Shown here: positions 150 through 64,000 of the stretch, in pieces
Numbering within the stretch: position 1 is the stretch's first letter
Layout: each line of letters opens with the position of its first letter
Assembly: GCA_002269645.1 (NCBI GenBank)
Contig: NIVC01001537.1
Span: 124,001 to 188,000 of the forward strand
DNA from: Macrostomum lignano
Taxonomy: Eukaryota
Reading direction: 5' to 3'
DNA: 64,000 nt
Program-made: the position numbers and the translations under genes
Notes under the pieces: model-generated
Seen by the model: the letters and a program-made list of their open reading frames with translations, nothing else
Databases searched by the model: none
What the model was told of the DNA's origin: nothing

Positions 150-740
150 ACTAGTTCCGCTATGGTCATGAGATTTATAGCTACTAGTTCCGCCCTGGTC
201 ATAGGCTCATAGCTTACTAGTTCTGTTCTGGTCATGAGATTCATAGCTACTAGTTGAGCCCTGGTCATAGGCTCATAGCTACTAGTTCTGCTCTGGTCAT
301 AGACTCAGCTACCAGTTCTGCTCTGGTCATAGACTCATAGATACTAGTTCCGCTCTGGTCATAGACTCATAGATACTAGTTCCGCTCTGGTCATAGACTC
401 ATAGATACTAGTTCCGCTCTGGTCATAGACTCATAGCTACGAGTTCCGCTCTGGTCATGGACTCATAGCTACTAATTCCGCTCTGGTCATAGACTCATAG
501 CTACGAGTTCCGCTCTGGTCATGGACTCATAGCTACTAATTCCGCTCTGGTCATAGACTCATAGCTACGAGTTCCGCTCTGGTCATGGACTCATAGCTAC
601 TAATTCCGCTCTGGTCATAGACTCATAGCTACTAATTCCGCTCTGGTCATAGACTCATAGCTACTAGTTCCGCTCTGGTCATGGACTCATAGCTACCAGT
701 TCTGCTCTGGTCATGGACTCATAGCTACCAGTTCTGCTAT
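150..740. repeat. 32-bp minisatellite (ctactagttccgctctggtcatagactcatag)
   Basis: Tandem unit read directly; period 32 (e.g. 341 to 373). Confidence 0.9.
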
Positions 741-821: not shown

Positions 822-840
822 TTTATTGTCGGATTTTATT
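822..840 (-). terminator. Two AATAAA polyadenylation signals for the NPF gene
   Basis: tttatt at 822-827 and 835-840, about 150 nt past the stop codon. Confidence 0.6.
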
Positions 841-981: not shown

Positions 982-1395
982 TCATCGCCTATCAATGCGG
1001 TACATCCGCTTGCCGAAGCGGGGCCGGCTCATGGAGTGCAGGTACTGGTTGAGGTTGTTGATGTACTCGGCGGCCGCGGCCGGGGTGTCGAAGGAGGCCT
1101 GCCGCTTGCCGAAGCGGGGCCGGCTGACCGAGTGCAGGTACTGGTTCAGGCTGGTCACATACTTGGCGGCCTCGGCTGGCGAGCGGAAGTCGTAGGCGTT
1201 GCCGCGCTTGCCGAATCGGGGCCGGCTGACCGAGTGGAAGTACTTGTTCAGGTAGTGTAAGTACTCGGCCACGTCGTCGGCGGAGGTGAAGTCTTTGTTC
1301 ACCTCCTCGGGCGCTCTGGCCAGAGACTTGGACTGGCCGAGGGCGGCGGCGGACAGGATCAAAAGCAGAAGAGTTGACAGTTGAGCCGCGTTCAT
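982..1395 (-). CDS. NPY/NPF-family neuropeptide precursor carrying three tandem ...SRPRF-amide peptides
   Basis: Hydrophobic signal peptide MNAAQLSTLLLLILSAAALG. Three copies end in RPRF-GKR (amidation plus dibasic cleavage), each with Tyr 10 and 17 residues from the C-terminus as in NPY/NPF. Single exon, with TATA upstream and AATAAA downstream. Confidence 0.92.
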   Translation of the reverse strand: MNAAQLSTLLLLILSAAALGQSKSLARAPEEVNKDFTSADDVAEYLHYLNKYFHSVSRPRFGKRGNAYDFRSPAEAAKYVTSLNQYLHSVSRPRFGKRQASFDTPAAAAEYINNLNQYLHSMSRPRFGKRMYRIDRR

Positions 1396-1689: not shown

Positions 1690-3545
1690 TGTCTGCCCTA
1701 GTGTCTGCCTTAGTGTCTGCCCTAGTGTCTGCCCTAGTGTCTGTCTTAGTGTCTGCCTTAGTGTCTGCCTTAGTGTCTGCCATGTTGTCTGCCTTAGTCT
1801 CTGCTATAGTGTCTGCCCTAGTGTCTGCCTTAGTGTCTGCCCTAGTGTCTACCTTAGTGTCTGCTTTAGTGTCTACTTTAGTGTCTACCATAGTGTCTGC
1901 CCTAGTGTCTGCCCTAGTGTCTGCCCTAGTGTCTGCCCTAGTGTCTGCCCTAGTGTCTGCCATAGTGTCTGTCTTAGTGTCTGCCTTAGTGTCTGCCATG
2001 TTGTCTGCCTTAGTCTCTGCTATAGTGTCTGCCCTAGTGTCTGCCCTAGTGTCTGCCCTAGTGTCTGCCCTAGTGTCTGCCATAGTGTCTGCCCTAGTGT
2101 CTGCCCTAGTGTCTGCCCTAGTGTCTGCCCTAGTGTCTGCCATAGTGTCTGTCTTAGTGTCTGCCTTAGTGTCTGTCTTAGTGTCTGCCTTAGTGTCTGC
2201 CCTAGTGTCTGCCCTAGTGTCTGTCTTAGTGTCTGCCTTAGTGTCTGCCATGTTGTCTGCCTTAGTCTCTGTCTTAGTGTCTGCCATAGTGTCTGCCCTA
2301 GTGTCTGCCCTAGTGTCTGCCCTAGTGTCTGCCCTAGTGTCTGCCATAGTGTCTGCCCTAGTGTCTGCCCTAGTGTCTGCCCTAGTGTCTGCCATAGTGT
2401 CTGTCTTAGTGTCTGCCATAGTGTCTGCCCTAGTGTCTGCCCTAGTGTCTGCCATAGTGTCTGCCCTAGTGTCTGCCATAGTGTCTGCCATAGTGTCTGC
2501 CATAGTGTCTGCCCTAGTGTCTGCCATAGTGTCTGCCATAGTGTCTGCCCTAGTGTCTGCCATAGTGTCTGCCCTAGTGTCTGCCATAGTGTCTGTCTTA
2601 GTGTCTGCCCTAGTGTCTGCCCTAGTGTCTGCCCTAGTGTCTGCCATAGTGTCTGCCATAGTGTCTGCCCTAGTGTCTGCCATAGTGTCTGCCATAGTGT
2701 CTGCCCTAGTGTCTGCCATAGTGTCTGTCTTAGTGTCTGCCCTAGTGTCTGCCCTAGTGTCTGCCCTAGTGTCTGCCATAGTGTCTGCCCTAGTGTCTGC
2801 CATAGTGTCTGCCCTAGTGTCTGCCATAGTGTCTGCCCTAGTGTCTGCCCTAGTGTCTGCCCTAGTGTCTGCCCTAGTGTCTGCCCTAGTGTCTGCCCTA
2901 GTGTCTGTCTTAGTGTCTGCCATAGTGTCTGCCCTAGTGTCTGCCATAGTGTCTGCCCTAGTGTCTGCCCTAGTGTCTGCCCTAGTGTCTGCCCTAGTGT
3001 CTGCCCTAGTGTCTGCCCTAGTGTCTGCCATAGTGTCTGTCTTAGTGTCTGCCATAGTGTCTGCCCTAGTGTCTGCCATAGTGTCTGCCCTAGTGTCTGC
3101 CCTAGTGTCTGCCATAGTGTCTGCCCTAGTGTCTGCCCTAGTGTCTGCCATAGTGTCTGCCCTAGTGTCTGCCCTAGTCTCTGCTATAGTGTCTGCCCTA
3201 GTGTCTGCCATAGTGTCTGCCATAGTGTCTGCCCTAGTGTCTGCCCTAGTGTCTGCCCTAGTGTCTGCCCTAGTGTCTGCCATAGTGTCTGCCCTAGTGT
3301 CTGCCCTAGTGTCTGCCCTAGTGTCTGCCCTAGTGTCTGCCATAGTGTCTGCCCTAGTGTCTGCCATAGTGTCTGTCTTAGTGTCTGCCCTAGTGTCTGC
3401 CATAGTGTCTGCCCTAGTGTCTGCCATAGTGTCTGCCCTAGTGTCTGCCCTAGTGTCTGCCCTAGTGTCTGCCCTAGTGTCTGCCCTAGTGTCTGCCATA
3501 GTGTCTGTCATAGTGTCTGCCCTAGTGTCTGCCATAGTGTCTGTC
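1690..3545. repeat. 12-bp minisatellite (tagtgtctgccc/cca)
   Basis: Tandem array; it explains the ADTR and SALV pseudo-ORFs. Confidence 0.95.
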
Positions 3546-3994
3546 TGGTGCTTAGTCTATCTGTCTACATGTCAATTAGTTATAATTAACCAGTTTATGC
3601 ATTAATGCTTCTAATTCCCTAATTATACCATTAGCGACAAGATTCGTGTCAATATCATGGGCGTAAACAGTGATTTTCAGATAACAAAGATGCGAGACCC
3701 ACATCAAAGACTAAAGATGAATGAGCAGCAGAAATGCTTCAAAAGCACCTGCTAAGGCCTCAAAACGCCTTGTAATTATAAAATTAGCGTCGTCTAAAAA
3801 ATTTCGGTGAAAACAAATTTATTGAGCAGACACTGCAGGGATTAAGCAGACACTTGGATCTCAAAAAGTCCCTTTAGTGCACTTGATGGCTTCCCTTCCG
3901 AGTTTTAAAAAAACACAAAATTCGAACACCCGTACTTCTTGCACTTGTGTTCTCAATGCTTGTCGAAAAATCACCCAGGGGTTTGTATGTGGTA

Positions 3995-4575
3995 TCGGAC
4001 AGGGTTTGTCTGGGTGTGGGACAGGGTTTGTCTGGGGTGTGGGACAGGGTTGTCTGGGGTATGGGACAGGGTTTGTCTGGGGTATGAGACAGGGTTTGAC
4101 TGGGATATGGGACAGGGTTTGACTGGGGTATGGGACATGTTTGACTGGGTTATGGGACATGTTTGACTGGGGTATGGGACAGGGTTTGTCTGGAGTGTGG
4201 GACAGGGTTTGTCTGGGGTATGGGACAGGGTTTGACTGGAGTGTGGGACAGGGTTTGTCTGGGGTATGGGACAGGGTTTGACTGGGGTATGGGACAGGGT
4301 TTGTCTGGAGTGTGGGACAGGGTTGTCTGGGGTGAAGGACAAGATTTGTCTTGTGTGGGAGACAGGGTTTTTTCTAGGGTGTGCGACAGGGTTTGTCTGG
4401 GGTATGGGACAAGGTTTGACTGGGGTATAAGACAGGGTTTGTCTGGGGTATAAGACAGGGTTTGTCTGGGGTATGGGACAGGGTTTGACTGGGATATGGG
4501 ACAGGGTTTGACTGGGGTATGGGACATGTTTGACTAGGGTATGGGACAGGGTTTTGTCTGGGGTGTGGGACAGGT
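3995..4575 (+). repeat. 22-23-bp minisatellite (tgggacagggtttgtctggggta)
   Basis: Tandem unit; reverse complement of the 5700-6600 array. Confidence 0.9.
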
Positions 4576-4999
4576 TTTTGTAGTATCGGAAGGGTTTATT
4601 ACATGTGTGTTTTATTGCTCCATTGATTTTTGTAAGGCTTGAGCAGACATCTCTTCTATAAATAGAAAAGTCAAAGCGCAAGATGTGCTCTGCTACCGGC
4701 AAAGACTGTTTCGCTACCCAACAAAATTCTTTCAAAGGCACCACCACGTTAGCTAAAGTGGCCAAATATGGAACAAAGATTACAAAAACAGCCAAAACTG
4801 GCACTGCCAGCACGTCGCTCATCTCCTGACGAAGCCAATTGTCAAGCCGAGTCAGGGCGTGGCGACACCCCGAGGCGATAATTAAAAGCCGCCGTTCAAC
4901 AAATTTTCGGAATGGAAGCGTGACAAACTGCTCAAAGTCTGCCCGAACTCGGCCGGCGCGTCACCCGTAACTTCGCATATTCACTTCTTTAAAGATCCT

Positions 5000-6747: not shown

Positions 6748-9700
6748 TCACTCGTCGCAGTTCAATGAAAAATCGAACGGGGCGAACGATTTCTTGAACT
6801 CCTCGGCCGCGGCGGTCTCCTCGGCCTCGGACTGCAGGCAGTCGCGCCAGTCTACGCGAGTCGGACAGTCGTAGACGTGATGCGAGGCCAGGACGTCGCG
6901 GCCGAAGCTCAACGGAAACGTGTCGAACTGGTCCCGACGAATCGGGCAGAACAGCCGCTCGCCGGTGGGCAGGTCGGCGCAGAAATACGGCGCCCCGGGC
7001 GGCACGAGGTCGGCCAGATCGGCGCCAGGGTGCAGCTCGCGAAGACTCAGCCTTGGCTCGTGCTTGTCGGCGACGTCCAGGAAAGCGGCTTTGAGGCCGG
7101 GCAGGGAGGCCACGGGCACGGGGATGCAGTGCAGCTGGGCGTGGAAGCATTTGAAATTCCGCTCGATGTACACCGGGGCCAGCTCGGAGGCGGCGTACAG
7201 CTGGGCCAGGCAGCGCTTGTAGCGGGAGAACTCGGACAGAACCTCGGCCGGACAGTCGGACAGGCATTTGTGATGTCCGATTGGCAGGGCGATCACGTGC
7301 TGCGGCACCAGGGGACCGCGGGCCAAAGCCAGGTAAGTTGACTTGGCCACGGATACAACCAGCTGCCGCTGCACTTCCGGGTTGCCCAGGCAGAACCAGC
7401 AGGCCGCCTGCTGCTGCCGCCGCTTGGCTTCGCCACCGCCGCCGCCGCCTTCGGATCTCCGTTTCTGACCGGCGTGGCCCGGCTTGCCGGAGGCTTCGGC
7501 GAAGAAGAAACTGCGCGGCCCGGCTTCTGAGGGGGGAGGGGATTGGGAATCCAGATTGGTGGCGCTTGGTGGGCAGAGGGTCTGCAGTTGCTGTCTACAG
7601 CTGACCAGTTGCTGCCTACAGCTGACCAGTTGCTGTCTACAGCTGACCAGTTGCTGTCTACAGCTGACCAGTTGCTGTCTACAGCTGACCAGTTGCTGTC
7701 TACAGCTGACCAGTTGCTGTCTACAGCTGACCAGTTGCTGTCTACAGCTGACCAGTTGCTGTCTACAGCTGACCAGTTGCTGTCTACAGCTGACCAGTTG
7801 CTGTCTACAGCTGACCAGTTGCTGTCTACAGCTGACCAGTTGCTGTCTACAGCTGACCAGTTGCTGTCTACAGCTGACCAGTTGCTGTCTACAGCTGACT
7901 AATATAAACAACTACAGCTGACCAATATAAACAGCTATAGCTGACTAATATAAACAGCTACAGCTGACCAATATAAACAGCTACAGCTGACTAATATAAA
8001 CAGCTACAGCTGACAAATATAAACAGCTACAGCTGACTAATATAAACATCTACAGCTGACCAATATAACATCTACAGCTGACCAATATAAGCATCTACAG
8101 CTGACCAATATAAGCATCTACAACTGACCAATATAAACATCTACAGCTGACTAATATAAACATCTACAGCTGACCAATATAAGCATCTACAGCTGACCAA
8201 TATAAACATCTACAGCTGACCAATATAAACATCTACAGCTGACCAATATAAGCATCTACAGCTGACCAATATAACATCTACAGCTGACCAATATAAGCAT
8301 CTACAGCTGACCAATATAAACATCTACAGCTGACCAATATAACATCTACAGCTGACCAATATAAACATCTACAGCTGACCAATATAAACATCTACAGCTG
8401 ACCAATATAAACATCTACAGCTGACCAATATAAACATCTACAGCTGACCAATATATACATCTACAGCTGACCAATATAAACATCTACAGCTGACCAATAT
8501 AAGCATCTACAGCTGACCAATATAAACATCTACAGCTGACCAATATAACATCTACAGCTGACCAATATAAGCATCTACAGCTGACCAATATAACATCCAC
8601 AGCTGACCAAAAAAAGCATCTATAGCTGACCAATATAACATCTACAGCTGACCAATATAAGCATCTACAGCTGACCAATATAACATCTACAGCTGACCAA
8701 TATAAGCATCTACAGCTGACCAATATAAGCATCTACAGCTGACCAATATAAACATCTACAGCTGACCAATATAAACATCTACAGCTGACCAATATAAACA
8801 TCTACAGCTGACCAATATAAACATCTACAGCTGACCAATATAAACATCTACAGCTGACCAATATATACATCTACAGCTGACCAATATAAACATCTACAGC
8901 TGACCAATATAAGCATCTACAGCTGACCAATATAAACATCTACAGCTGACCAATATAACATCTACAGCTGACCAATATAAGCATCTACAGCTGACCAATA
9001 TAACATCTAGTACAGCTGACCAATATAAGCATCTACAGCTGACCAATATAAACATCTACAGCTGACCAATATAAACATCTACAGCTGACCAATATAACAT
9101 CTACAGCTGACCAATATAAACATCTACAGCTGACCAATATAAACATCTACAGCTGACCAATATAAGCATCTACAGCTGACCAATATAAACATCTACAGCT
9201 GACCAATATAAACATCTACAGCTGACCAATATAAACATCTACAGCTGACCAATATAAACATCTACAGCTGACCAATATAAACATCTACAGCTGACCAATA
9301 TAAACATCTACAGCTGACCAATATAAACATCTACAGCTGACCAATATAAGCATCTACAGCTGACCAATATAAACATCTACAGCTGACCAATATAACATCT
9401 ACAGCTGACCAATATAAGCATCTACAGCTGACCAATATAACATCTAGTACAGCTGACCAATATAAGCATCTACAGCTGACCAATATAAACATCTACAGCT
9501 GACCAATATAAACATCTACAGCTGACCAATATAACATCTACAGCTGACCAATATAAACATCTACAGCTGACCAATATAAACATCTACAGCTGACCAATAT
9601 AAACATCTACAGCTGACCAATATAAACATCTACAGCTGACCAATATATACATCTACAGCTGACCAATATAAACATCTACAGCTGACCAATATAAACATCT

Positions 9701-12700
9701 ACAGCTGACCAATATAAACAACTACAGCTGACCAATATAAACATCTACAGCTGACCAATATAAGCATCTACAGCTGACCAATATAAGCATCTACAGCTGA
9801 CCAATATAAGCATCTACAGCTGACCAATATAAGCATCTACAGCTGACCAATATAAACATCTACAGCTGACCAATATAAACATCTACAGCTGACCAATATA
9901 ACATCTACAGCTGACCAATATAAACATCTACAGCTGACCAATATAAACATCTACAGCTGACCAATATAAACATCTACAGCTGACCAATATAAACATCTAC
10001 AGCTGACCAATATTTACATCTACAGCTGACCAATATAAACATCTACAGCTGACCAATATAAACATCTACAGCTGACCAATATAAACATCTACAGCTGACC
10101 AATATAAACAACTACAGCTGACCAATATAAACATGTACAGCTCAGACACAAAATAGCACCCCAGCTCACCAACTGTGCTGACATCCTTGCCGTCATCCTT
10201 ATACGGACAGTCGGTGACGCCAGCGCCGCTGGGAGTCTGTTTCAGCAGTTCAGCCCGATCAATCTTAGCCAAAGGGGTTAACTGTAAAGCGTACAGACAG
10301 CGCCTGCCGCTGCTAACGCCAGCCAACGAGTGGAACCTGGTCGAGTGCCGCTCCCGTTCCGAGCCGACCCGGTGATTCCGATAGGGCAGCCGTTCGAAGT
10401 CCAGCCCGCTGTCCGAGCCGTCGCCGCAGGCGCACACGTGATAGCGCGGGCGGAGACGGGCGGCCAGCCTGGCAATGGCGGGATGAGCGAACGGCTTGGA
10501 GGCGGACTCCACCGCCTGGCACTCGTCCATTGGTAGCCAGTCTTCGCAGCCAGTCAGAGTGCCAGCTGGCCAGGCGCAGGTTAGCAACAAATCCACGCCT
10601 GGGAACTCTGCGTCTGAGGCTTGGCCGGCCAGCCAGGCCAGCTCAGAGTCTCTGAATCTGCGGGACTCCTCGCCGCGGCTGGTGCCTGTGGGATGGGAGG
10701 GTAGCAACTGGAGCATCGGGAGGGTAGCAACTGGAGCATCGGGAGGGTAGCAACTGGAGCATCGGGAGGGTAGCAACTGGAGCATCGGGAGGGTAGCAAC
10801 TGAAGCATCGGGAGGGTAGCAACTGGAGCATCGGGAGGGTAGCAACTGGAGCATCGGGAGGGTAGCAACTGGAGCATCGGGAGGGTAGCAACTGGAGCAT
10901 CGGGAGGGTAGCAACTGAAGCATCGGGAGGGTAGCAACTGAAGCATCGGGAGGGTAGCAACTGAAGCATCGGGAGGGTAGCAACTGGAGCATCGGGAGGG
11001 TAGCAACTGAAGCATCGGGAGGGTAGCAACTGAAGCATCGGGAGGGTAGAAACTGGAGCATCGGGAGGGTAGCAACTGAAGCATCGGGAGGGTAGCAACT
11101 GGAGCATCGGGAGGGTAGCAACTGAAGCATCGGAGAGGGTAGCAACTGAAGCATCGGGAGGGTAGCAGCTGAAGCATTGGAGAGGGTAGCAACTGAAGCA
11201 TCGGGAGGGTAGCAACTGAACTGAAGCATCGGGAGGGTAGCAACTGAAGCATCGGGAGGGTAGCAACTGAACTGAAGCATCGGGAGGGTAGCAACTGAAC
11301 TGAAGCATCGGGAGGGTAGCAACTGGAGCATCGGGAGGGTAGCAACTGAACTGAAGCATCGGGAGGGTAGCAACTGGAGCATCGGGAGGGTAGCAACTGG
11401 AGCATCGGGAGGGTAGCAACTGAAGCATCGGGAGGGTAGCAACTGGAGCATCGGGAGGGTAGCAACTGAAGCATCGGAGAGGGTAGCAACTGAAGCATCG
11501 GGAGGGTAGCAGCTGAAGCATTGGAGAGGGTAGCAACTGAAGCATCGGGAGGGTAGCAACTGAACTGAAGCATCGGGAGGGTAGCAACTGAAGCATCGGG
11601 AGGGTAGCAACTGAACTGAAGCATCGGGAGGGTAGCAACTGAAGCATCGGGAGGGTAGCAACTGAACTGAAGCATCGGGAGGGTAGCAACTGAACTGAAG
11701 CATCGGGAGGGTAGCAACTGGAGCATCGGGAGGGTAGCAACTGAACTGAAGCATCGGGAGGGTAGCAACTGGAGCATCGGGAGAGTAGCAACTGGAGCAA
11801 CGGAAGGGTAGCAACTGGAGCATCGGGAGGGTAGCAACTGAACTGAAGCATCGGAGAGGGTAGCAGCTGAAGCATCGGGAGGGTAGCAACTGAAGCATTA
11901 GGAGGGTAGCAGCTGAAGCATGGGAGAGGGTAGCAACTGGAGCATCGGGAGGGTAGCAACTGAAGCATCGGAAGGGTAGCAACTGAAGCATCGGGAGGGT
12001 AGCAACTGGAGCATCGGGAGGGTAGCAACTGAACTGAAGCATCGGGAGGGTAGCAACTGGAGCATCGGGAGAGTAGCAACTGGAGCAACGGAAGGGTAGC
12101 AACTGGAGCATCGGGAGGGTAGCAACTGAACTGAAGCATCGGGAGGGTAGCAGCTGAAGCATTGGAGAGGGTAGCAACTGAAGCATCGGGAGGGTAGCAA
12201 CTGAACTGAAGCATCGGGAGGGTAGCAACTGAAGCATCGGGAGGGTAGCAACTGAAGCATCGGGAGGGTAGCAACTGAACTGAAGCATCGGGAGGGTAGC
12301 AACTGAACTGAAGCATCGGGAGGGTAGCAACTGGAGCATCGGGAGGGTAGCAACTGAACTGAAGCATCGGGAGGGTAGCAACTGGAGCATCGGGAGAGTA
12401 GCAACTGGAGCAACGGAAGGGTAGCAACTGGAGCATCGGGAGGGTAGCAACTGAACTGAAGCATCGGAGAGGGTAGCAGCTGAAGCATCGGGAGGGTAGC
12501 AACTGAAGCATTAGGAGGGTAGCAGCTGAAGCATGGGAGAGGGTAGCAACTGGAGCATCGGGAGGGTAGCAACTGAAGCATCGGAAGGGTAGCAACTGAA
12601 GCATCGGGAGGGTAGCAGCTGAAGCATCGGAGGGTAGCAAGGAATTGAAGAGGTGATAAAGGCGGCACTAACCAGCCAAGTAGGCCACCTTGAGCCCAGT

Positions 12701-49030: not shown

Positions 49031-51268
49031 TCACTGCAGCATCAATCTGTCAGGTGGTGCTCGAACTCGAGTCGGGTAGCGCCGGGGTGCCTCGTTAGCA
49101 GAGTCAGCCGTGTCTGCCTGCGGCGAGGCTGGCGTGCCGCCAGCGTCAGGTGCCGCGCAGTCCTCGGCCGGGGTTGTGCTGCTATTCGACTCGGCCAACC
49201 CAGCGGGAGCCGCCAGCAGCTGGTCAGCGTGTCGCGCTTGTACGCCGCGCCCAGAATCGACTGTGCAGTTGCGAGTGCCGGCATTGACAATGACACCTTC
49301 GGCCCAGCGGCTGCTTTCTCCTGCACGAGCAGCAGTGCTGAAATCGCGGTAGAGCACACGATCTCCAGGCTGGAACTGGCGCGCTGGCCGCTGCTGCTGA
49401 AGCTGATGCTGCTGTCGCTGTTGCATGGCCGAAGTCAACGATGGTGTCAGGAGGTCCAGCCGGCTGCGCAGCCGGCGGCCAATGAGCAGCTGACTCGGCG
49501 CGGTGCCACTGACGCTGTGCGGAGTGTTGCGATAGGCCATCAGCAGTCGTTGAAGTTGCGCGTCGGAGTGACCGCACTTACTCAGATGCCGCTTCAGCAC
49601 CTGGACGAAGCGCTCGGCCTGGCCGTTGGTCGCCGGGTGGAATGGCGCCGAGAAGATGTGCCGGATGCCGTTGGAACTGACGAACTCAGCGAACTCGGCC
49701 GAAGCGAATTGTGGCCCGTTGTCCGACACCAAGGTTCTCGGTAGGCCGAGACGAGCGAAGATTTCTCGCAGGCAGCTGATCGTCACAGTTGCAATGGTGC
49801 TGCTCATCCTGTGCACCTCTGGCCACTTGCTGTGCGCGTCGACCAGGACCAGGTAAGTGCGGCCGTCCACGGGTCCCACAAAGTCGACGTGCAACCGCTC
49901 CCATGGCTCAGTCGGAAATGGCCATGGCTGTACCGGGGCGGAGCCTTGATTGTGTCGAAATTTGCCAAGTCGGTTCTCGAACACCGCAGCGAATCTCTCA
50001 TGCAGGTCGCTGATGTCGTAATCGGTGGACACTGCGTGCACCTGGGCCATTATTGTCGGCCAGTCCAGCCCAAGGTGAGCCAGCCAGTCTCGTCCCAGCA
50101 GTGCCGTGTCTCCTTTGTCGACTACAAGCAGCGGTAGCTGTAGCTGCTGGGCGTTGTGCTGGACGCAGACTGTGGCTTGGCCTCGCGGATGAAAGCGTTC
50201 ATTGGTGAAGGTTCGCAGAACTGCGGCAGATGGAGCCAGCTGTAGCTGAGGGAGCAACTTCTGCTGCAGCTGCTGCGGCATCAGCGTGACTGCAGAGCCG
50301 GTGTCGATGACAAACTGGCATTCCTGGCCGTTGACGAGCAGCATGACTGTCGGTCCAGCGTTTCTGCCTGTTGGTCGGACTGCGAAGATGGGCACCTGGG
50401 TGTCACACGCGCCTTCGACAGTAGGTGCCATCCGCTCCTCTTGTAGCATGTGTAGCTTGGCCTGCTTGGTGGACTGGCAGACCTTGCGGATATGGCCGAC
50501 CTTGCCGCATGCATGGCACTTGGCGTCCCTGAACTTGCATGAATGACGCTCGTGAGAACCGCCACAGCTTTTGCATGAGCTGCCACCGCCACCGTTGCCG
50601 CTGCCGTTGCCGCTGCCGCCGTTGCCGCTGCCGCCGTTTTCGCTGCCGCTGACCCGATGCCCTCTGTGGTGCGCTGAAGGTGTCACCTGCTTGCGGCTAC
50701 CTCTCTTGCTGACAAATTGCAGATTGGCAACAGACTCCGATGCCCTTTGTGACATCTCCAGGGACGAACGCTCTGCAGACTCCAGCGACATAGCCTTTGT
50801 TTGCAGGGATTCGAAAGTCGGCTCAACGACTTCCAGCAGCTTGGCTCGATAGGCGTCGCTTCGAAGACCGAACACGAGTTGGTCTCGGAGCCGCTCATTT
50901 AGCGACTCACCGAAGTTGCAGTCAGCTGACAGAGCCTGGAGCCCCGCGATGAATGCCGTGAAGCTCTCGCCTGCTTGCTGAGTTCGTTGTTGGAAACGGA
51001 ACCTCGCAGCTAGCTCCGAAGGCTTGGGTGCGAAGTGCGTTGTCAGCAGCTTCTTCAAGTCAGCGTAAGACTTCTGCGCCACTTGGACCGGCTGGCACAG
51101 ACTCCGCAGTGTGATGTAAGCCTCCTCTCCAATCGACGTGATCAGAGTTGCCACTTTTGCCTCATCCTTCACCTCCTTGCAGATGAAGTACTGCTCGAGA
51201 CGCTCTAGGAAGATCTCGGTGTTTGTAGATGGTAGCAGTTGGCCCAGCGTGGGCAGACTCGTCGCCAT
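49031..51268 (-). CDS. Gag-protease-integrase polyprotein, 745 aa, no RT/RH (copy 1)
   Basis: Gag with knuckles CKSCGGSHERHSC and CHACGKVGHIRKVC; protease IDTGS; integrase HVDF / VSDNG / NGQAER; C-terminal FQPGDRV..W. No YxDD motif. The ATG overlaps the PBS. Confidence 0.9.
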   Translation of the reverse strand: MATSLPTLGQLLPSTNTEIFLERLEQYFICKEVKDEAKVATLITSIGEEAYITLRSLCQPVQVAQKSYADLKKLLTTHFAPKPSELAARFRFQQRTQQAGESFTAFIAGLQALSADCNFGESLNERLRDQLVFGLRSDAYRAKLLEVVEPTFESLQTKAMSLESAERSSLEMSQRASESVANLQFVSKRGSRKQVTPSAHHRGHRVSGSENGGSGNGGSGNGSGNGGGGSSCKSCGGSHERHSCKFRDAKCHACGKVGHIRKVCQSTKQAKLHMLQEERMAPTVEGACDTQVPIFAVRPTGRNAGPTVMLLVNGQECQFVIDTGSAVTLMPQQLQQKLLPQLQLAPSAAVLRTFTNERFHPRGQATVCVQHNAQQLQLPLLVVDKGDTALLGRDWLAHLGLDWPTIMAQVHAVSTDYDISDLHERFAAVFENRLGKFRHNQGSAPVQPWPFPTEPWERLHVDFVGPVDGRTYLVLVDAHSKWPEVHRMSSTIATVTISCLREIFARLGLPRTLVSDNGPQFASAEFAEFVSSNGIRHIFSAPFHPATNGQAERFVQVLKRHLSKCGHSDAQLQRLLMAYRNTPHSVSGTAPSQLLIGRRLRSRLDLLTPSLTSAMQQRQQHQLQQQRPARQFQPGDRVLYRDFSTAARAGESSRWAEGVIVNAGTRNCTVDSGRGVQARHADQLLAAPAGLAESNSSTTPAEDCAAPDAGGTPASPQADTADSANEAPRRYPTRVRAPPDRLMLQ

Positions 51269-51543
51269 TGTGATAACTTTGTTAAGCGAGGCAGAAGTGT
51301 GGAATTGCAGGAGTGAGTAAAAGGTGCTCGCTTGAGAGCTAAGCTGACAATATTTATTACTTAGCACTGAGGTGGTGGGTGCAGACAGATTCAAACGCGC
51401 GCATGGGGTGGGGTGGAATAAAATACAATCTCTAAGCCGATCAATAACAACTCCACTGCTAGTGAGTCCACACTACAGTGCATGCAACCTATAGCAAAGT
51501 TCATCGTGTCACTATGTCACATCTCCCCCCTAAGTTAACACCC

Positions 51544-53781
51544 TCACTGCAGCATCAATCTGTCAGGTGGTGCTCGAACTCGAGTCGGGTAGCGCCGGGG
51601 TGCCTCGTTAGCAGAGTCAGCCGTGTCTGCCTGCGGCGAGGCTGGCGTGCCGCCAGCGTCAGGTGCCGCGCAGTCCTCGGCCGGGGTTGTGCTGCTATTC
51701 GACTCGGCCAACCCAGCGGGAGCCGCCAGCAGCTGGTCAGCGTGTCGCGCTTGTACGCCGCGCCCAGAATCGACTGTGCAGTTGCGAGTGCCGGCATTGA
51801 CAATGACACCTTCGGCCCAGCGGCTGCTTTCTCCTGCACGAGCAGCAGTGCTGAAATCGCGGTAGAGCACACGATCTCCAGGCTGGAACTGGCGCGCTGG
51901 CCGCTGCTGCTGAAGCTGATGCTGCTGTCGCTGTTGCATGGCCGAAGTCAACGATGGTGTCAGGAGGTCCAGCCGGCTGCGCAGCCGGCGGCCAATGAGC
52001 AGCTGACTCGGCGCGGTGCCACTGACGCTGTGCGGAGTGTTGCGATAGGCCATCAGCAGTCGTTGAAGTTGCGCGTCGGAGTGACCGCACTTACTCAGAT
52101 GCCGCTTCAGCACCTGGACGAAGCGCTCGGCCTGGCCGTTGGTCGCCGGGTGGAATGGCGCCGAGAAGATGTGCCGGATGCCGTTGGAACTGACGAACTC
52201 AGCGAACTCGGCCGAAGCGAATTGTGGCCCGTTGTCCGACACCAAGGTTCTCGGTAGGCCGAGACGAGCGAAGATTTCTCGCAGGCAGCTGATCGTCACA
52301 GTTGCAATGGTGCTGCTCATCCTGTGCACCTCTGGCCACTTGCTGTGCGCGTCGACCAGGACCAGGTAAGTGCGGCCGTCCACGGGTCCCACAAAGTCGA
52401 CGTGCAACCGCTCCCATGGCTCAGTCGGAAATGGCCATGGCTGTACCGGGGCGGAGCCTTGATTGTGTCGAAATTTGCCAAGTCGGTTCTCGAACACCGC
52501 AGCGAATCTCTCATGCAGGTCGCTGATGTCGTAATCGGTGGACACTGCGTGCACCTGGGCCATTATTGTCGGCCAGTCCAGCCCAAGGTGAGCCAGCCAG
52601 TCTCGTCCCAGCAGTGCCGTGTCTCCTTTGTCGACTACAAGCAGCGGTAGCTGTAGCTGCTGGGCGTTGTGCTGGACGCAGACTGTGGCTTGGCCTCGCG
52701 GATGAAAGCGTTCATTGGTGAAGGTTCGCAGAACTGCGGCAGATGGAGCCAGCTGTAGCTGAGGGAGCAACTTCTGCTGCAGCTGCTGCGGCATCAGCGT
52801 GACTGCAGAGCCGGTGTCGATGACAAACTGGCATTCCTGGCCGTTGACGAGCAGCATGACTGTCGGTCCAGCGTTTCTGCCTGTTGGTCGGACTGCGAAG
52901 ATGGGCACCTGGGTGTCACACGCGCCTTCGACAGTAGGTGCCATCCGCTCCTCTTGTAGCATGTGTAGCTTGGCCTGCTTGGTGGACTGGCAGACCTTGC
53001 GGATATGGCCGACCTTGCCGCATGCATGGCACTTGGCGTCCCTGAACTTGCATGAATGACGCTCGTGAGAACCGCCACAGCTTTTGCATGAGCTGCCACC
53101 GCCACCGTTGCCGCTGCCGTTGCCGCTGCCGCCGTTGCCGCTGCCGCCGTTTTCGCTGCCGCTGACCCGATGCCCTCTGTGGTGCGCTGAAGGTGTCACC
53201 TGCTTGCGGCTACCTCTCTTGCTGACAAATTGCAGATTGGCAACAGACTCCGATGCCCTTTGTGACATCTCCAGGGACGAACGCTCTGCAGACTCCAGCG
53301 ACATAGCCTTTGTTTGCAGGGATTCGAAAGTCGGCTCAACGACTTCCAGCAGCTTGGCTCGATAGGCGTCGCTTCGAAGACCGAACACGAGTTGGTCTCG
53401 GAGCCGCTCATTTAGCGACTCACCGAAGTTGCAGTCAGCTGACAGAGCCTGGAGCCCCGCGATGAATGCCGTGAAGCTCTCGCCTGCTTGCTGAGTTCGT
53501 TGTTGGAAACGGAACCTCGCAGCTAGCTCCGAAGGCTTGGGTGCGAAGTGCGTTGTCAGCAGCTTCTTCAAGTCAGCGTAAGACTTCTGCGCCACTTGGA
53601 CCGGCTGGCACAGACTCCGCAGTGTGATGTAAGCCTCCTCTCCAATCGACGTGATCAGAGTTGCCACTTTTGCCTCATCCTTCACCTCCTTGCAGATGAA
53701 GTACTGCTCGAGACGCTCTAGGAAGATCTCGGTGTTTGTAGATGGTAGCAGTTGGCCCAGCGTGGGCAGACTCGTCGCCAT
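51544..53781 (-). CDS. Gag-protease-integrase polyprotein, 745 aa, no RT/RH (copy 2)
   Basis: Translation identical to copy 1. Confidence 0.9.
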   Translation of the reverse strand: MATSLPTLGQLLPSTNTEIFLERLEQYFICKEVKDEAKVATLITSIGEEAYITLRSLCQPVQVAQKSYADLKKLLTTHFAPKPSELAARFRFQQRTQQAGESFTAFIAGLQALSADCNFGESLNERLRDQLVFGLRSDAYRAKLLEVVEPTFESLQTKAMSLESAERSSLEMSQRASESVANLQFVSKRGSRKQVTPSAHHRGHRVSGSENGGSGNGGSGNGSGNGGGGSSCKSCGGSHERHSCKFRDAKCHACGKVGHIRKVCQSTKQAKLHMLQEERMAPTVEGACDTQVPIFAVRPTGRNAGPTVMLLVNGQECQFVIDTGSAVTLMPQQLQQKLLPQLQLAPSAAVLRTFTNERFHPRGQATVCVQHNAQQLQLPLLVVDKGDTALLGRDWLAHLGLDWPTIMAQVHAVSTDYDISDLHERFAAVFENRLGKFRHNQGSAPVQPWPFPTEPWERLHVDFVGPVDGRTYLVLVDAHSKWPEVHRMSSTIATVTISCLREIFARLGLPRTLVSDNGPQFASAEFAEFVSSNGIRHIFSAPFHPATNGQAERFVQVLKRHLSKCGHSDAQLQRLLMAYRNTPHSVSGTAPSQLLIGRRLRSRLDLLTPSLTSAMQQRQQHQLQQQRPARQFQPGDRVLYRDFSTAARAGESSRWAEGVIVNAGTRNCTVDSGRGVQARHADQLLAAPAGLAESNSSTTPAEDCAAPDAGGTPASPQADTADSANEAPRRYPTRVRAPPDRLMLQ

Positions 53782-54034
53782 TGTGATAACTTTGTTAAGC
53801 GAGGCAGAAGTGTGGAATTGCAGGAGTGAGTAAAAGGTGCTCGCTTGAGAGCTAAGCTGACAATATTTATTACTTAGCACTGAGGTGGTGGGTGCAGACA
53901 GATTCAAACGCGCGCATGGGGTGGGGTGGAATAAAATACAATCTCTAAGCCGATCAATAACAACTCCACTGCTAGTGAGTCCACACTACAGTGCATGCAA
54001 CCTATAGCAAAGTTCATCGTGTCACTATGTCACA

Positions 54035-55904: not shown

Positions 55905-64000
<8,096 letters not shown>

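What the first reader, a model, noticed from the sequence alone, without database searches (positions are those of the whole stretch)
982..1395. Intronless precursor encoding three full NPY/NPF-type peptides
Seen in sequence: three 29-34-aa peptides (APEEVNKDFTSADDVAEYLHYLNKYFHSVSRPRFa if cleaved after LAR; GNAYDFRSPAEAAKYVTSLNQYLHSVSRPRFa; QASFDTPAAAAEYINNLNQYLHSMSRPRFa). Each keeps the Tyr at -10 and -17, and they are separated by GKR. Nucleotide copies are spaced 102 and 96 nt apart, indicating internal tandem duplication. Established knowledge: NPY/NPF precursors usually yield one peptide, end in GRPRFa in invertebrates, and often have an intron near RPRF. This gene has SRPRFa and no intron. 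Inference: a multi-copy NPF design that amplifies or diversifies ligand output, possibly retroposed and then expanded.
Basis: partly seen in the sequence, partly recalled or inferred. Interest (0 to 1): 0.78.

Follow-up and report, generated by a model that had tools for sequence, protein, structure and literature searches.

The report
Intronless three-peptide neuropeptide F gene
This flatworm (Macrostomum lignano) gene encodes three neuropeptide F hormones in a row on one intron-free precursor, breaking the "one peptide, one conserved intron" rule of the NPY/NPF family, and belongs to a small undescribed family of such genes.

Summary
Window 982-1395 (minus strand) is a complete 137-aa ORF with a signal peptide and three NPF-type units, each ending SRPRF-GKR. 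The units are spaced 102 and 96 nt apart. Each unit alone passes Pfam's threshold for PF00159 (NPY/pancreatic hormone).

The source is Macrostomum lignano. GenBank holds a 99%-identical "hypothetical protein".

The same genome has a canonical single-unit NPF gene. That gene carries the hallmark phase-2 intron in the Arg codon of RF. Three multi-unit genes lack it:
- this gene (three units);
- a neighbour about 8 kb away (three units in the genome, annotated as two);
- a two-unit gene on another contig.

Units pair by position across the genes. dN/dS between paralogues is 0.15-0.19, so the peptides are under purifying selection.

The best reading is a working prohormone cleaved at the KR sites and amidated, giving three distinct NPF peptides. 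It most likely arose by intron loss (possibly retroposition) followed by internal duplication.

SRPRFa is not special: the canonical paralogue and many arthropod NPFs have it. Multi-unit NPFs also sit unremarked in krill and in other data. I found no published description, and the papers I read state that NPF is encoded once per precursor.

Verdict: a new variant of a known kind, of moderate interest.

The parts
982..1395 (-). Complete coding sequence of the three-unit NPF preprohormone (137 aa plus the TGA stop at 982-984). There is no intron in the CDS.
   Evidence: Pfam PF00159 E=1.1e-27 with 3 stretches; 99% identical to GenBank M. lignano BOX15_Mlig009822g2
1336..1395 (-). Predicted signal peptide, aa 1-20 (MNAAQLSTLLLLILSAAALG). 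Cleavage after G20 or S22 was judged by eye with the -3/-1 rule, not by a predictor.
   Evidence: the sequence itself; helix at aa 3-21 in a low-confidence model; inference
1315..1335 (-). Short N-terminal spacer QSKSLAR (aa 21-27). It is either removed by a monobasic cut after R27 or retained as an N-terminal extension of peptide 1.
   Evidence: the sequence itself; paralogue B has the equivalent SKYLLK|APQE; inference
1204..1314 (-). NPF unit 1: APEEVNKDFTSADDVAEYLHYLNKYFHSVSRPRF followed by GKR
   Evidence: Pfam 34.9 bits against a 28.7-bit cut-off; positional orthologue of unit 1 in gene B, 17/22 identical; amphipathic helix
1102..1203 (-). NPF unit 2: GNAYDFRSPAEAAKYVTSLNQYLHSVSRPRF followed by GKR
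   Evidence: Pfam 39.3 bits; closest to unit 2 of gene C and to unit 3 of this gene, 14/22 each
1006..1101 (-). NPF unit 3: QASFDTPAAAAEYINNLNQYLHSMSRPRF followed by GKR. The N-terminal Gln could cyclise to pyroGlu.
   Evidence: Pfam 34.2 bits; positional orthologue of units 2 and 3 of gene B, 18/22 identical
985..1005 (-). Seven-residue C-terminal tail MYRIDRR. It stands where canonical NPY/NPF precursors carry the C-terminal peptide (CPON).
   Evidence: the sequence itself; canonical layout as described in PMC4208409
1515..1520 (-). TATAAA box 125 nt upstream of the ATG. A CCAAT box lies at 1573-1577 and a GC box at about 1581-1591.
   Evidence: The transcript-derived GenBank model extends 78 nt upstream of the ATG, consistent with a start site just downstream of the TATA box. 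Function is inferred.
822..840 (-). Two AATAAA polyadenylation signals (835-840 and 822-827), 142 and 155 nt after the stop codon
   Evidence: function is inferred

Best explanation
This is a functional Macrostomum lignano prohormone gene of the NPY/NPF peptide family with a derived polyprotein architecture.

How it most likely works (inferred from the sequence):
1. The signal peptide sends the 137-aa precursor into the secretory pathway.
2. A prohormone convertase cuts after each Lys-Arg.
3. A carboxypeptidase trims the basic residues.
4. The exposed Gly is used for C-terminal amidation.

One translation therefore yields three different amphipathic-helical peptides of about 34, 31 and 29 aa. 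All end in SRPRF-amide, and the third probably starts with pyroGlu. They presumably act on NPF-type GPCRs, so each transcript releases a fixed 1:1:1 cocktail of NPF isoforms.

How it most likely arose: a copy of the canonical single-unit, intron-bearing NPF gene lost the conserved intron. This may have happened through an mRNA intermediate. That removed the exon boundary inside the RF codons, so the whole peptide unit could duplicate in tandem. A precursor with at least two units then gave rise by gene duplication to three genes: this one, its neighbour about 8 kb away, and one on another contig. Further unit duplications followed within the genes.
For: Shown here:
- The ORF is intact, with a signal-peptide-like N-terminus and three G-K-R processing and amidation sites.
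- Each unit alone exceeds the Pfam PF00159 gathering score.
- All units match the NPF consensus and have helical hydrophobic moments above about 99% of shuffles.
- The locus in a second assembly differs at 2 of 414 nt in the ORF and also has three units.
- Selection is purifying between paralogous units: omega is 0.19 (signal peptide plus unit 1, A vs B), 0.17 (A3 vs B2) and 0.15 (A2 vs C2), with dS of 0.6-2.0.
- Units are orthologous by position across genes, so the multi-unit state predates the gene duplications.
- The canonical single-unit M. lignano NPF gene has one 941-nt phase-2 intron in the Arg codon of RF. Genes A, B and C are uninterrupted.
- TATA, CCAAT and AATAAA signals sit in the expected places.

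From the literature:
- The Arg-codon intron is a conserved NPY/NPF hallmark across phyla (PMC7314547). It is present in 10 of 11 planarian npy genes (PMC2953531).
- NPF is described as encoded once per precursor (PMC3749230; PMC4208409; bioRxiv 10.1101/265579).
Against: - There is no direct evidence here for transcription, processing, amidation or receptor activation. Expression rests only on the GenBank model looking transcript-derived.
- The units lack the proline-rich N-terminus needed for a PP-fold: one Pro each, and the Pfam match starts at profile position 8-9.
- The structure model is low-confidence (pLDDT 44.5).
- Platynereis NPY-4, which also ends SRPRFa, activates a receptor outside the NPY/NPF receptor clade (PMC8557429). 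The receptor class is therefore uncertain.
- Retroposition hallmarks (poly(A) tract, target-site duplications, flank homology) are not detectable. The route of intron loss is unresolved.
Confidence: 0.85

Rival explanations
1. The gene is a real multi-peptide prohormone, but its peptides do not signal through NPY/NPF-type receptors. They would form a lineage-specific RFamide system acting on another GPCR group. The precedent is Platynereis NPY-4, whose receptor falls in the FMRFamide-type-1-related expansion.
For: Platynereis NPY-4 ends in SRPRFamide and activates a receptor outside the NPY/NPF clade (PMC8557429). The units here are N-terminally short and lack the polyproline segment. The gene lacks the family's precursor and intron hallmarks.
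Against: Each unit scores above the PF00159 threshold. The canonical, intron-bearing M. lignano NPF has the same SRPRF tail, so the tail does not separate the two classes. In NPY/NPF peptides the C-terminal RPRF-amide and the helix are the receptor-binding part (general knowledge, not tested here).
Confidence: 0.2
2. Only one unit gives a bioactive peptide. The other two are spacer or propeptide material with no signalling role.
For: Canonical precursors yield one NPF plus a non-NPF C-terminal peptide. Within gene A, unit 2 vs unit 3 shows a higher omega of 0.66.
Against: All three units keep GKR sites, the RPRF tail, both Tyr residues and helix amphipathicity. Orthologous units in the paralogues are conserved with omega of 0.15-0.19 for unit 1, for unit 2 and for unit 3.
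Confidence: 0.07
3. This is a dead retrocopy or a chance ORF in repeat-rich DNA, and it makes no product.
For: The gene is intronless and is flanked on both sides by minisatellites. No expression data were examined here.
Against: The 137-aa ORF is intact, with a signal peptide and processing sites. Purifying selection across old paralogues is strong. Promoter and poly(A) signals are present. The GenBank model includes 5'UTR-derived residues, which suggests it was built from a transcript.
Confidence: 0.03
4. The unit count is an assembly artefact: the tandem repeat was mis-expanded or collapsed.
For: The neighbouring gene B shows that annotation and assembly struggle with these repeats. There the model drops exactly one 99-nt unit.
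Against: In this gene the three units share only 53-56% amino-acid identity, so they cannot be confused in assembly. An independent assembly (NIVC01000624.1) has the same three units with 2 differences in 414 nt.
Confidence: 0.02

Closest known systems
Canonical invertebrate neuropeptide F precursors, for example Moniezia expansa NPF, Schmidtea mediterranea npy-1 to npy-11, and M. lignano Mlig006883 (P0026)
   Same: The peptide chemistry is the same: an amphipathic helix with Tyr at -10 and -17, an RPRF-Gly-Lys-Arg tail for amidation, and a Pfam PF00159 match. The SRPRF ending is the same as in the species' own canonical NPF.
   Different: Canonical genes encode one peptide directly after the signal peptide, followed by a C-terminal peptide. 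They carry a phase-2 intron in the Arg codon of RF. This gene has three peptides, a 7-aa tail in place of the C-terminal peptide, no intron, and shorter peptides (29-34 aa against 36-40 aa) without a proline-rich N-terminus.
The M. lignano paralogues Mlig007142 (gene B, tandem neighbour) and Mlig025228 (gene C)
   Same: Both are intronless multi-unit NPF precursors, and their units are positionally orthologous to those of this gene.
   Different: Gene B has a very recent duplicate of its last unit (2 synonymous differences) and is annotated with only two units. Gene C has two units. Its first unit ends in RPQF and its last ends in G-stop without KR.
The three-unit 'Neuropeptide F' of the krill Meganyctiphanes norvegica (P0009/P0032, CAL4093327.1)
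   Same: It has a signal peptide followed by three NPF-type units, each ending RPRFGKR, with a short tail. The precursor is about the same size, at 143 aa.
   Different: It is an arthropod protein with the GRPRF ending and no specific similarity beyond the family motif, so the multi-unit state arose independently. The gene spans about 48 kb, so it contains introns. Their positions could not be read.
Short neuropeptide F (sNPF) and FMRFamide-type polyprotein precursors
   Same: The logic is the same: several amidated RFamide peptides are released from one precursor by dibasic cleavage.
   Different: sNPF peptides are typically short and end in xRLRFa or LFRFa, although the ice-krill paper reports 8-36 aa forms. 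They are not PF00159 members and pair with a different receptor clade. The units here are long, helical, bona fide PF00159 matches.
Platynereis dumerilii NPY-4
   Same: It is an NPY/NPF-like peptide ending in SRPRFamide.
   Different: I found no report of it being multi-unit. Its deorphanised receptor lies outside the NPY/NPF receptor clade. Whether that applies to the M. lignano peptides is unknown.

Membership tests
NPY/NPF peptide family (Pfam PF00159, Hormone_3) | Sequence match to the family profile above the curated threshold | tested here: met
   The whole protein scores 96.1 bits, E=1.1e-27, with 3 stretches. The units alone score 34.9, 39.3 and 34.2 bits against a cut-off of 28.7.
NPY/NPF peptide family | A C-terminal R-x-R-F/Y followed by Gly (the amide donor) and a basic cleavage site, with the consensus Y-L-x2-L-x2-Y-Y-x4-RPRFa and Tyr at -10 and -17 | tested here: met
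   All three units match Y-[LIV]-x2-L-x2-Y-[FL]-x4-RPRF followed by GKR. The second aromatic position is F or L instead of Y.
NPY/NPF peptide family | A peptide of about 36-40 residues with a proline-rich N-terminal segment that packs on the helix (PP-fold) | tested here: not met
   The peptides are 29-34 aa with one Pro each in the N-terminal part. The Pfam alignment starts at profile position 8-9 of 36. The structure model is too poor to judge the fold (pLDDT 44.5).
NPY/NPF precursor and gene architecture | A single peptide copy immediately after the signal peptide, followed by a C-terminal peptide (CPON) | tested here: not met
   There are three copies and a 7-aa tail.
NPY/NPF precursor and gene architecture | A phase-2 intron inside the codon of the Arg that precedes the C-terminal F/Y | tested here: not met
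   The CDS is uninterrupted at all three RPRF sites. The same genome's single-unit NPF gene does have this intron (AG|gtaaga...tttcag|A, 941 nt). The hallmark is described.
NPY/NPF signalling system | The peptide activates an NPY/NPF-type GPCR | not testable with these tools
   This needs receptor expression assays. A caution comes from Platynereis NPY-4.
sNPF / PrRP-type peptides | Short peptides with an xPxLRLRFa or LFRFa tail, several per precursor, and no PF00159 match | tested here: not met
   Several copies are present, but the peptides are 29-34 aa, end in SRPRF and match PF00159.

The most novel reading that the evidence does not exclude
Macrostomum carries an undescribed, lineage-specific family of intronless NPF polyprotein genes. 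There are at least three genes, encoding up to eight units (seven distinct peptide sequences). The family was born when a copy of the canonical NPF gene lost the ancient Arg-codon intron, which freed the peptide unit to multiply in tandem. Together with independent multi-unit NPFs in krill and in other unexamined taxa, this would show that neither 'single copy per precursor' nor the conserved intron is a dependable orthology marker for the NPY/NPF family. These are the two characters used to tell NPF from sNPF/PrRP. It would also show that NPF signalling can be diversified at the level of one transcript.
Probability: 0.55. Interest if true: 0.6.

Novelty: new variant of a known kind. Interest (0 to 1): 0.5.

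Why it matters
Gene structure (the Arg-codon intron) and precursor layout (one peptide after the signal peptide) are used as evidence when orthology is assigned among NPY/NPF, sNPF, PrRP and other RFamide peptides. Here the two characters fail together in one genome, right beside a canonical paralogue. This gives a natural example of how a single-peptide hormone gene turns into a polyprotein.

M. lignano is a transgenic and RNAi-tractable flatworm model. In planarians an NPF-family peptide (NPY-8) controls germline maintenance. The functions of the three co-released NPF isoforms are therefore directly testable.

On the practical side, the neighbouring gene is mis-annotated (one unit is spliced out), and all these genes are labelled 'hypothetical protein'.

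Tried and rejected
- **More copies in the window.** tblastn found none. Gene B would lie about 7 kb beyond the window's left edge.
- **Literature.** I searched for M. lignano NPF, the SRPRF motif, multi-copy NPF and krill NPF. No held paper describes these precursors. McVeigh et al. 2009 (Int J Parasitol) and Koziol et al. 2016 are not in the library, so a prior description there cannot be excluded. Thiel et al. 2018 list M. lignano in a figure legend, but the preprint shows this was for achatin only.
- **Structure.** AlphaFold on the single sequence gave pLDDT 44.5, too low to use, so no fold search was run.
- **Retroposition hallmarks.** I looked for flank similarity and poly(A) remnants among genes A, B, C and the canonical gene. 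Nothing was detectable.
- **Window allele vs GenBank allele.** There are only 2 differences in the ORF, against about 2% divergence in the flanks, so this comparison is too weak to measure selection. I used the paralogue comparisons instead.
- **Krill gene structure.** The DNA was not retrievable.
- **Taxon of the P0013 contig.** It was narrowed only to 'nearest named relatives are an annelid and Seison'.
- **ORFs on the opposite strand** (995-1195 and 1036-1260, plus strand). I rejected these as by-products of the GC-rich repeat.

Full report
**Observation**

The region 982-1395 holds, on the minus strand, a complete 137-aa ORF:

MNAAQLSTLLLLILSAAALGQSKSLARAPEEVNKDFTSADDVAEYLHYLNKYFHSVSRPRFGKRGNAYDFRSPAEAAKYVTSLNQYLHSVSRPRFGKRQASFDTPAAAAEYINNLNQYLHSMSRPRFGKRMYRIDRR

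- RPRFGKR occurs three times. The copies are 102 and 96 nt apart.
- Tandem Repeats Finder reports a 96-nt period with 2.5 copies and 82% matches.
- The ORF is GC-rich (63%, GC3 88%) in a window of 48% GC.

**Family**

- Pfam PF00159 (pancreatic hormone/NPY) matches with E=1.1e-27 in three stretches.
- Each unit scanned alone exceeds the curated cut-off: 34.9, 39.3 and 34.2 bits against 28.7.
- All three fit the NPF consensus Y-[LIV]-x2-L-x2-Y-[FL]-x4-RPRF.
- Their helical hydrophobic moments exceed about 99% of shuffles.
- The match starts at profile position 8-9, and each unit has a single proline in its N-terminal part. The proline-rich arm of the PP-fold is therefore missing.
- AlphaFold on the single sequence drew one helix per unit, but at pLDDT 44.5. 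I do not lean on it.

**Organism and locus**

- The nearest database protein (99% identical) is Macrostomum lignano BOX15_Mlig009822g2, a 'hypothetical protein, partial'. Its extra N-terminal residues are translated 5'UTR.
- In GenBank assembly GCA_002269645.1 the gene lies on NIVC01000624.1, downstream of a CwfJ-family gene. The window shows the same neighbour at 6748-7911.
- Window and GenBank alleles differ at 2 of 414 ORF positions and at about 2% of the unique flanks.
- On the minus strand the gene has GC and CCAAT boxes, TATAAA 125 nt before the ATG, and two AATAAA signals 142 and 155 nt after the stop.

**A gene family, not a singleton**

- Gene B. About 8 kb downstream on the same strand in the GenBank contig, and outside this window, lies Mlig007142g2, annotated as a two-unit, 108-aa 'neuropeptide Y'. 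Its genomic sequence is an uninterrupted 426-nt ORF of 141 aa with three units. The annotated 99-nt GT-AG 'intron' equals exactly one repeat unit, and units 2 and 3 differ by only two synonymous bases. This is most likely a collapsed transcript or a copy-number variant, not a real intron.
- Gene C. A profile of the three window units was searched against 1.84 billion representative proteins and gave 26 hits. Among them was a third M. lignano gene, Mlig025228 (two units, 105 aa, intronless, on another contig).
- Canonical gene. The same search found a canonical single-unit NPF, Mlig006883 (91 aa...YYAMVSRPRFGKRRR).

**The intron**

- The literature treats a phase-2 intron in the codon of the Arg before the terminal F/Y as a conserved NPY/NPF hallmark. 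[quoted passage not shown]
- It is also present in 10 of 11 planarian npy genes (PMC2953531).
- I mapped the gene of the canonical M. lignano NPF. It has exactly this intron: CCC AG|gtaaga...tttcag|A TTT, 941 nt.
- None of the eight units of genes A, B and C has it.
- So the hallmark is alive in this genome and was lost specifically in the multi-unit lineage.

**History**

Comparing the 22 residues before RPRF:
- A1 pairs with B1 (17/22).
- A3 pairs with B2 and B3 (18/22).
- A2 pairs with C2 and with A3 (14/22 each).
- C1 is nearest to A1 and B1 (10/22).
- The canonical peptide is the most distant from all of them (5-9/22).

The multi-unit state, with at least two units, therefore predates the duplication that separated A from B, and probably also the split from C. 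Later unit duplications occurred inside A (older) and inside B (very recent).

Flanks of A, B, C and the canonical gene share no detectable similarity, and no poly(A) remnant is left. Retroposition is plausible but cannot be told apart from other routes of intron loss.

**Function**

Between paralogues, synonymous divergence is high (dS 0.6-2.0) while omega is low:
- 0.19 for signal peptide plus unit 1 (A vs B);
- 0.17 for A3 vs B2;
- 0.15 for A2 vs C2.

The peptides have been under purifying selection for a long time. Together with the signal peptide, the intact dibasic and amidation sites and the promoter and poly(A) signals, this supports a working prohormone.

The mechanism I commit to is the standard one, and it is inferred:
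1. ER entry through the signal peptide.
2. Convertase cleavage at KR.
3. Carboxypeptidase trimming.
4. Gly-directed amidation.

This yields three distinct SRPRF-amide peptides in fixed 1:1:1 ratio per transcript. Two points stay open:
- The receptor class. Platynereis NPY-4 also ends SRPRFa, yet it activates a receptor outside the NPY/NPF clade (PMC8557429).
- The N-terminus of peptide 1. Signal-peptide cleavage after G20 or S22, and a monobasic cut after R27, were judged by eye.

**Comparison with what is known**

Papers I could read state the single-copy rule explicitly:
[quoted passage not shown] CPON' (PMC4208409).

Against that baseline the gene departs in three ways: copy number, absence of a C-terminal peptide, and absence of the intron.

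- SRPRFa is not unusual. It is the ending of the canonical M. lignano NPF, of aphid and decapod NPFs, and of Platynereis NPY-4.
- The multi-unit design is not unique. The profile search also recovered:
  - a three-unit 'Neuropeptide F' from the krill Meganyctiphanes norvegica, whose gene spans 48 kb and is therefore intron-bearing;
  - an uninterrupted two-unit NPF ORF on a 334-kb contig of an unidentified eukaryote, whose nearest named relatives are an annelid and Seison;
  - further two- to four-unit sequences from marine and environmental data.

I found none of these discussed in the held literature. The two most relevant flatworm neuropeptide surveys, McVeigh 2009 and Koziol 2016, are not in the library. 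A prior mention there cannot be ruled out.

**Verdict**

By peptide sequence this is an NPY/NPF-family member. By precursor and gene architecture it fails three of the family's defining features. I therefore file it as a new variant of a known kind: an intronless NPF polyprotein gene, one of at least three in M. lignano.

Interest is moderate (0.5). It is a clean, testable exception to characters that the field uses as orthology markers, and it sits in an experimentally tractable flatworm. It does not reveal a new kind of system.

Noticed in passing
L001:10001-10426 (NIVC01000624.1; about 7.6 kb beyond the window's left edge in gene orientation): The tandem paralogue Mlig007142g2 is annotated with a 99-nt GT-AG intron that equals exactly one repeat unit. 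The genomic ORF is uninterrupted and encodes three NPF units (141 aa), and units 2 and 3 differ by two synonymous bases. This is probably a mis-annotation or a copy-number polymorphism.
   Followed up: yes
L005:10001-10318 (NIVC01000376.1): A third M. lignano multi-unit NPF gene (Mlig025228) is intronless and has two units. Unit 1 has a proline-rich N-terminus and ends in RPQFGKR (Q in place of R). Unit 2 ends in SRPRFG followed directly by the stop codon.
   Followed up: partly
P0009/P0032 (Meganyctiphanes norvegica, CAL4093327.1 and CAL4116002.1): This krill 'Neuropeptide F' precursor has three units, each ending in [AG]GRPRFGKR, and its gene spans about 48 kb. The partial NPF2 reported from ice krill in 2013 may be a fragment of such a precursor.
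   Followed up: partly
L006:8001-8609 (ENA ERZ25767047, contig ctg37439, 334 kb): An uninterrupted ORF carries two full-length NPF units (...SRPRFGR and ...GRPRFGR) in an unidentified eukaryote. The nearest named relatives are NPFs of Lamellibrachia (an annelid) and Seison.
   Followed up: partly
P0020 (Tara/MERC), P0017 and P0028 (JGI metagenomes), P0010-P0012 (copepods, e.g. Eurytemora): There are further multi-unit precursors. P0020 has three to four NPF-like units (...DMDQSFNGQVRPRFGKR). P0017 and P0028 each have two short units ending in MQRPRFG. The copepod precursors carry 7-8 short xIRPRFGKR copies.
   Followed up: no
P0004, P0035, P0037 (Lepeophtheirus salmonis): Salmon-louse NPF isoforms differ by an insert placed exactly at the RPR|F junction, the conserved intron site. 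The insert carries another NPF-like C-terminal segment. This resembles the 'long NPF' isoforms of decapods.
   Followed up: no
window 150-738, 1690-3543, 3979-4578, 7888-10142, 10695-12640, 58906-62907 and many more: The window is packed with minisatellites and microsatellites. Examples are a 12-mer repeated 154 times right upstream of the NPF gene, which creates spurious 616- and 638-aa ORFs, and (AGAT) repeated about 1000 times at 58.9-62.9 kb.
   Followed up: no
window 49031-51394 and 51544-53907 (minus strand): Two tandem copies, 2513 nt apart, of a 787-aa retroelement pol-like ORF with aspartyl protease and integrase core domains.
   Followed up: no
window 6748-7911 (minus strand): An ORF with CwfJ C-terminal domains 1 and 2 (PF04677, PF04676), likely the last exon of the CwfJ-family gene. 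It is the same upstream neighbour as in the GenBank contig, which confirms synteny.
   Followed up: partly
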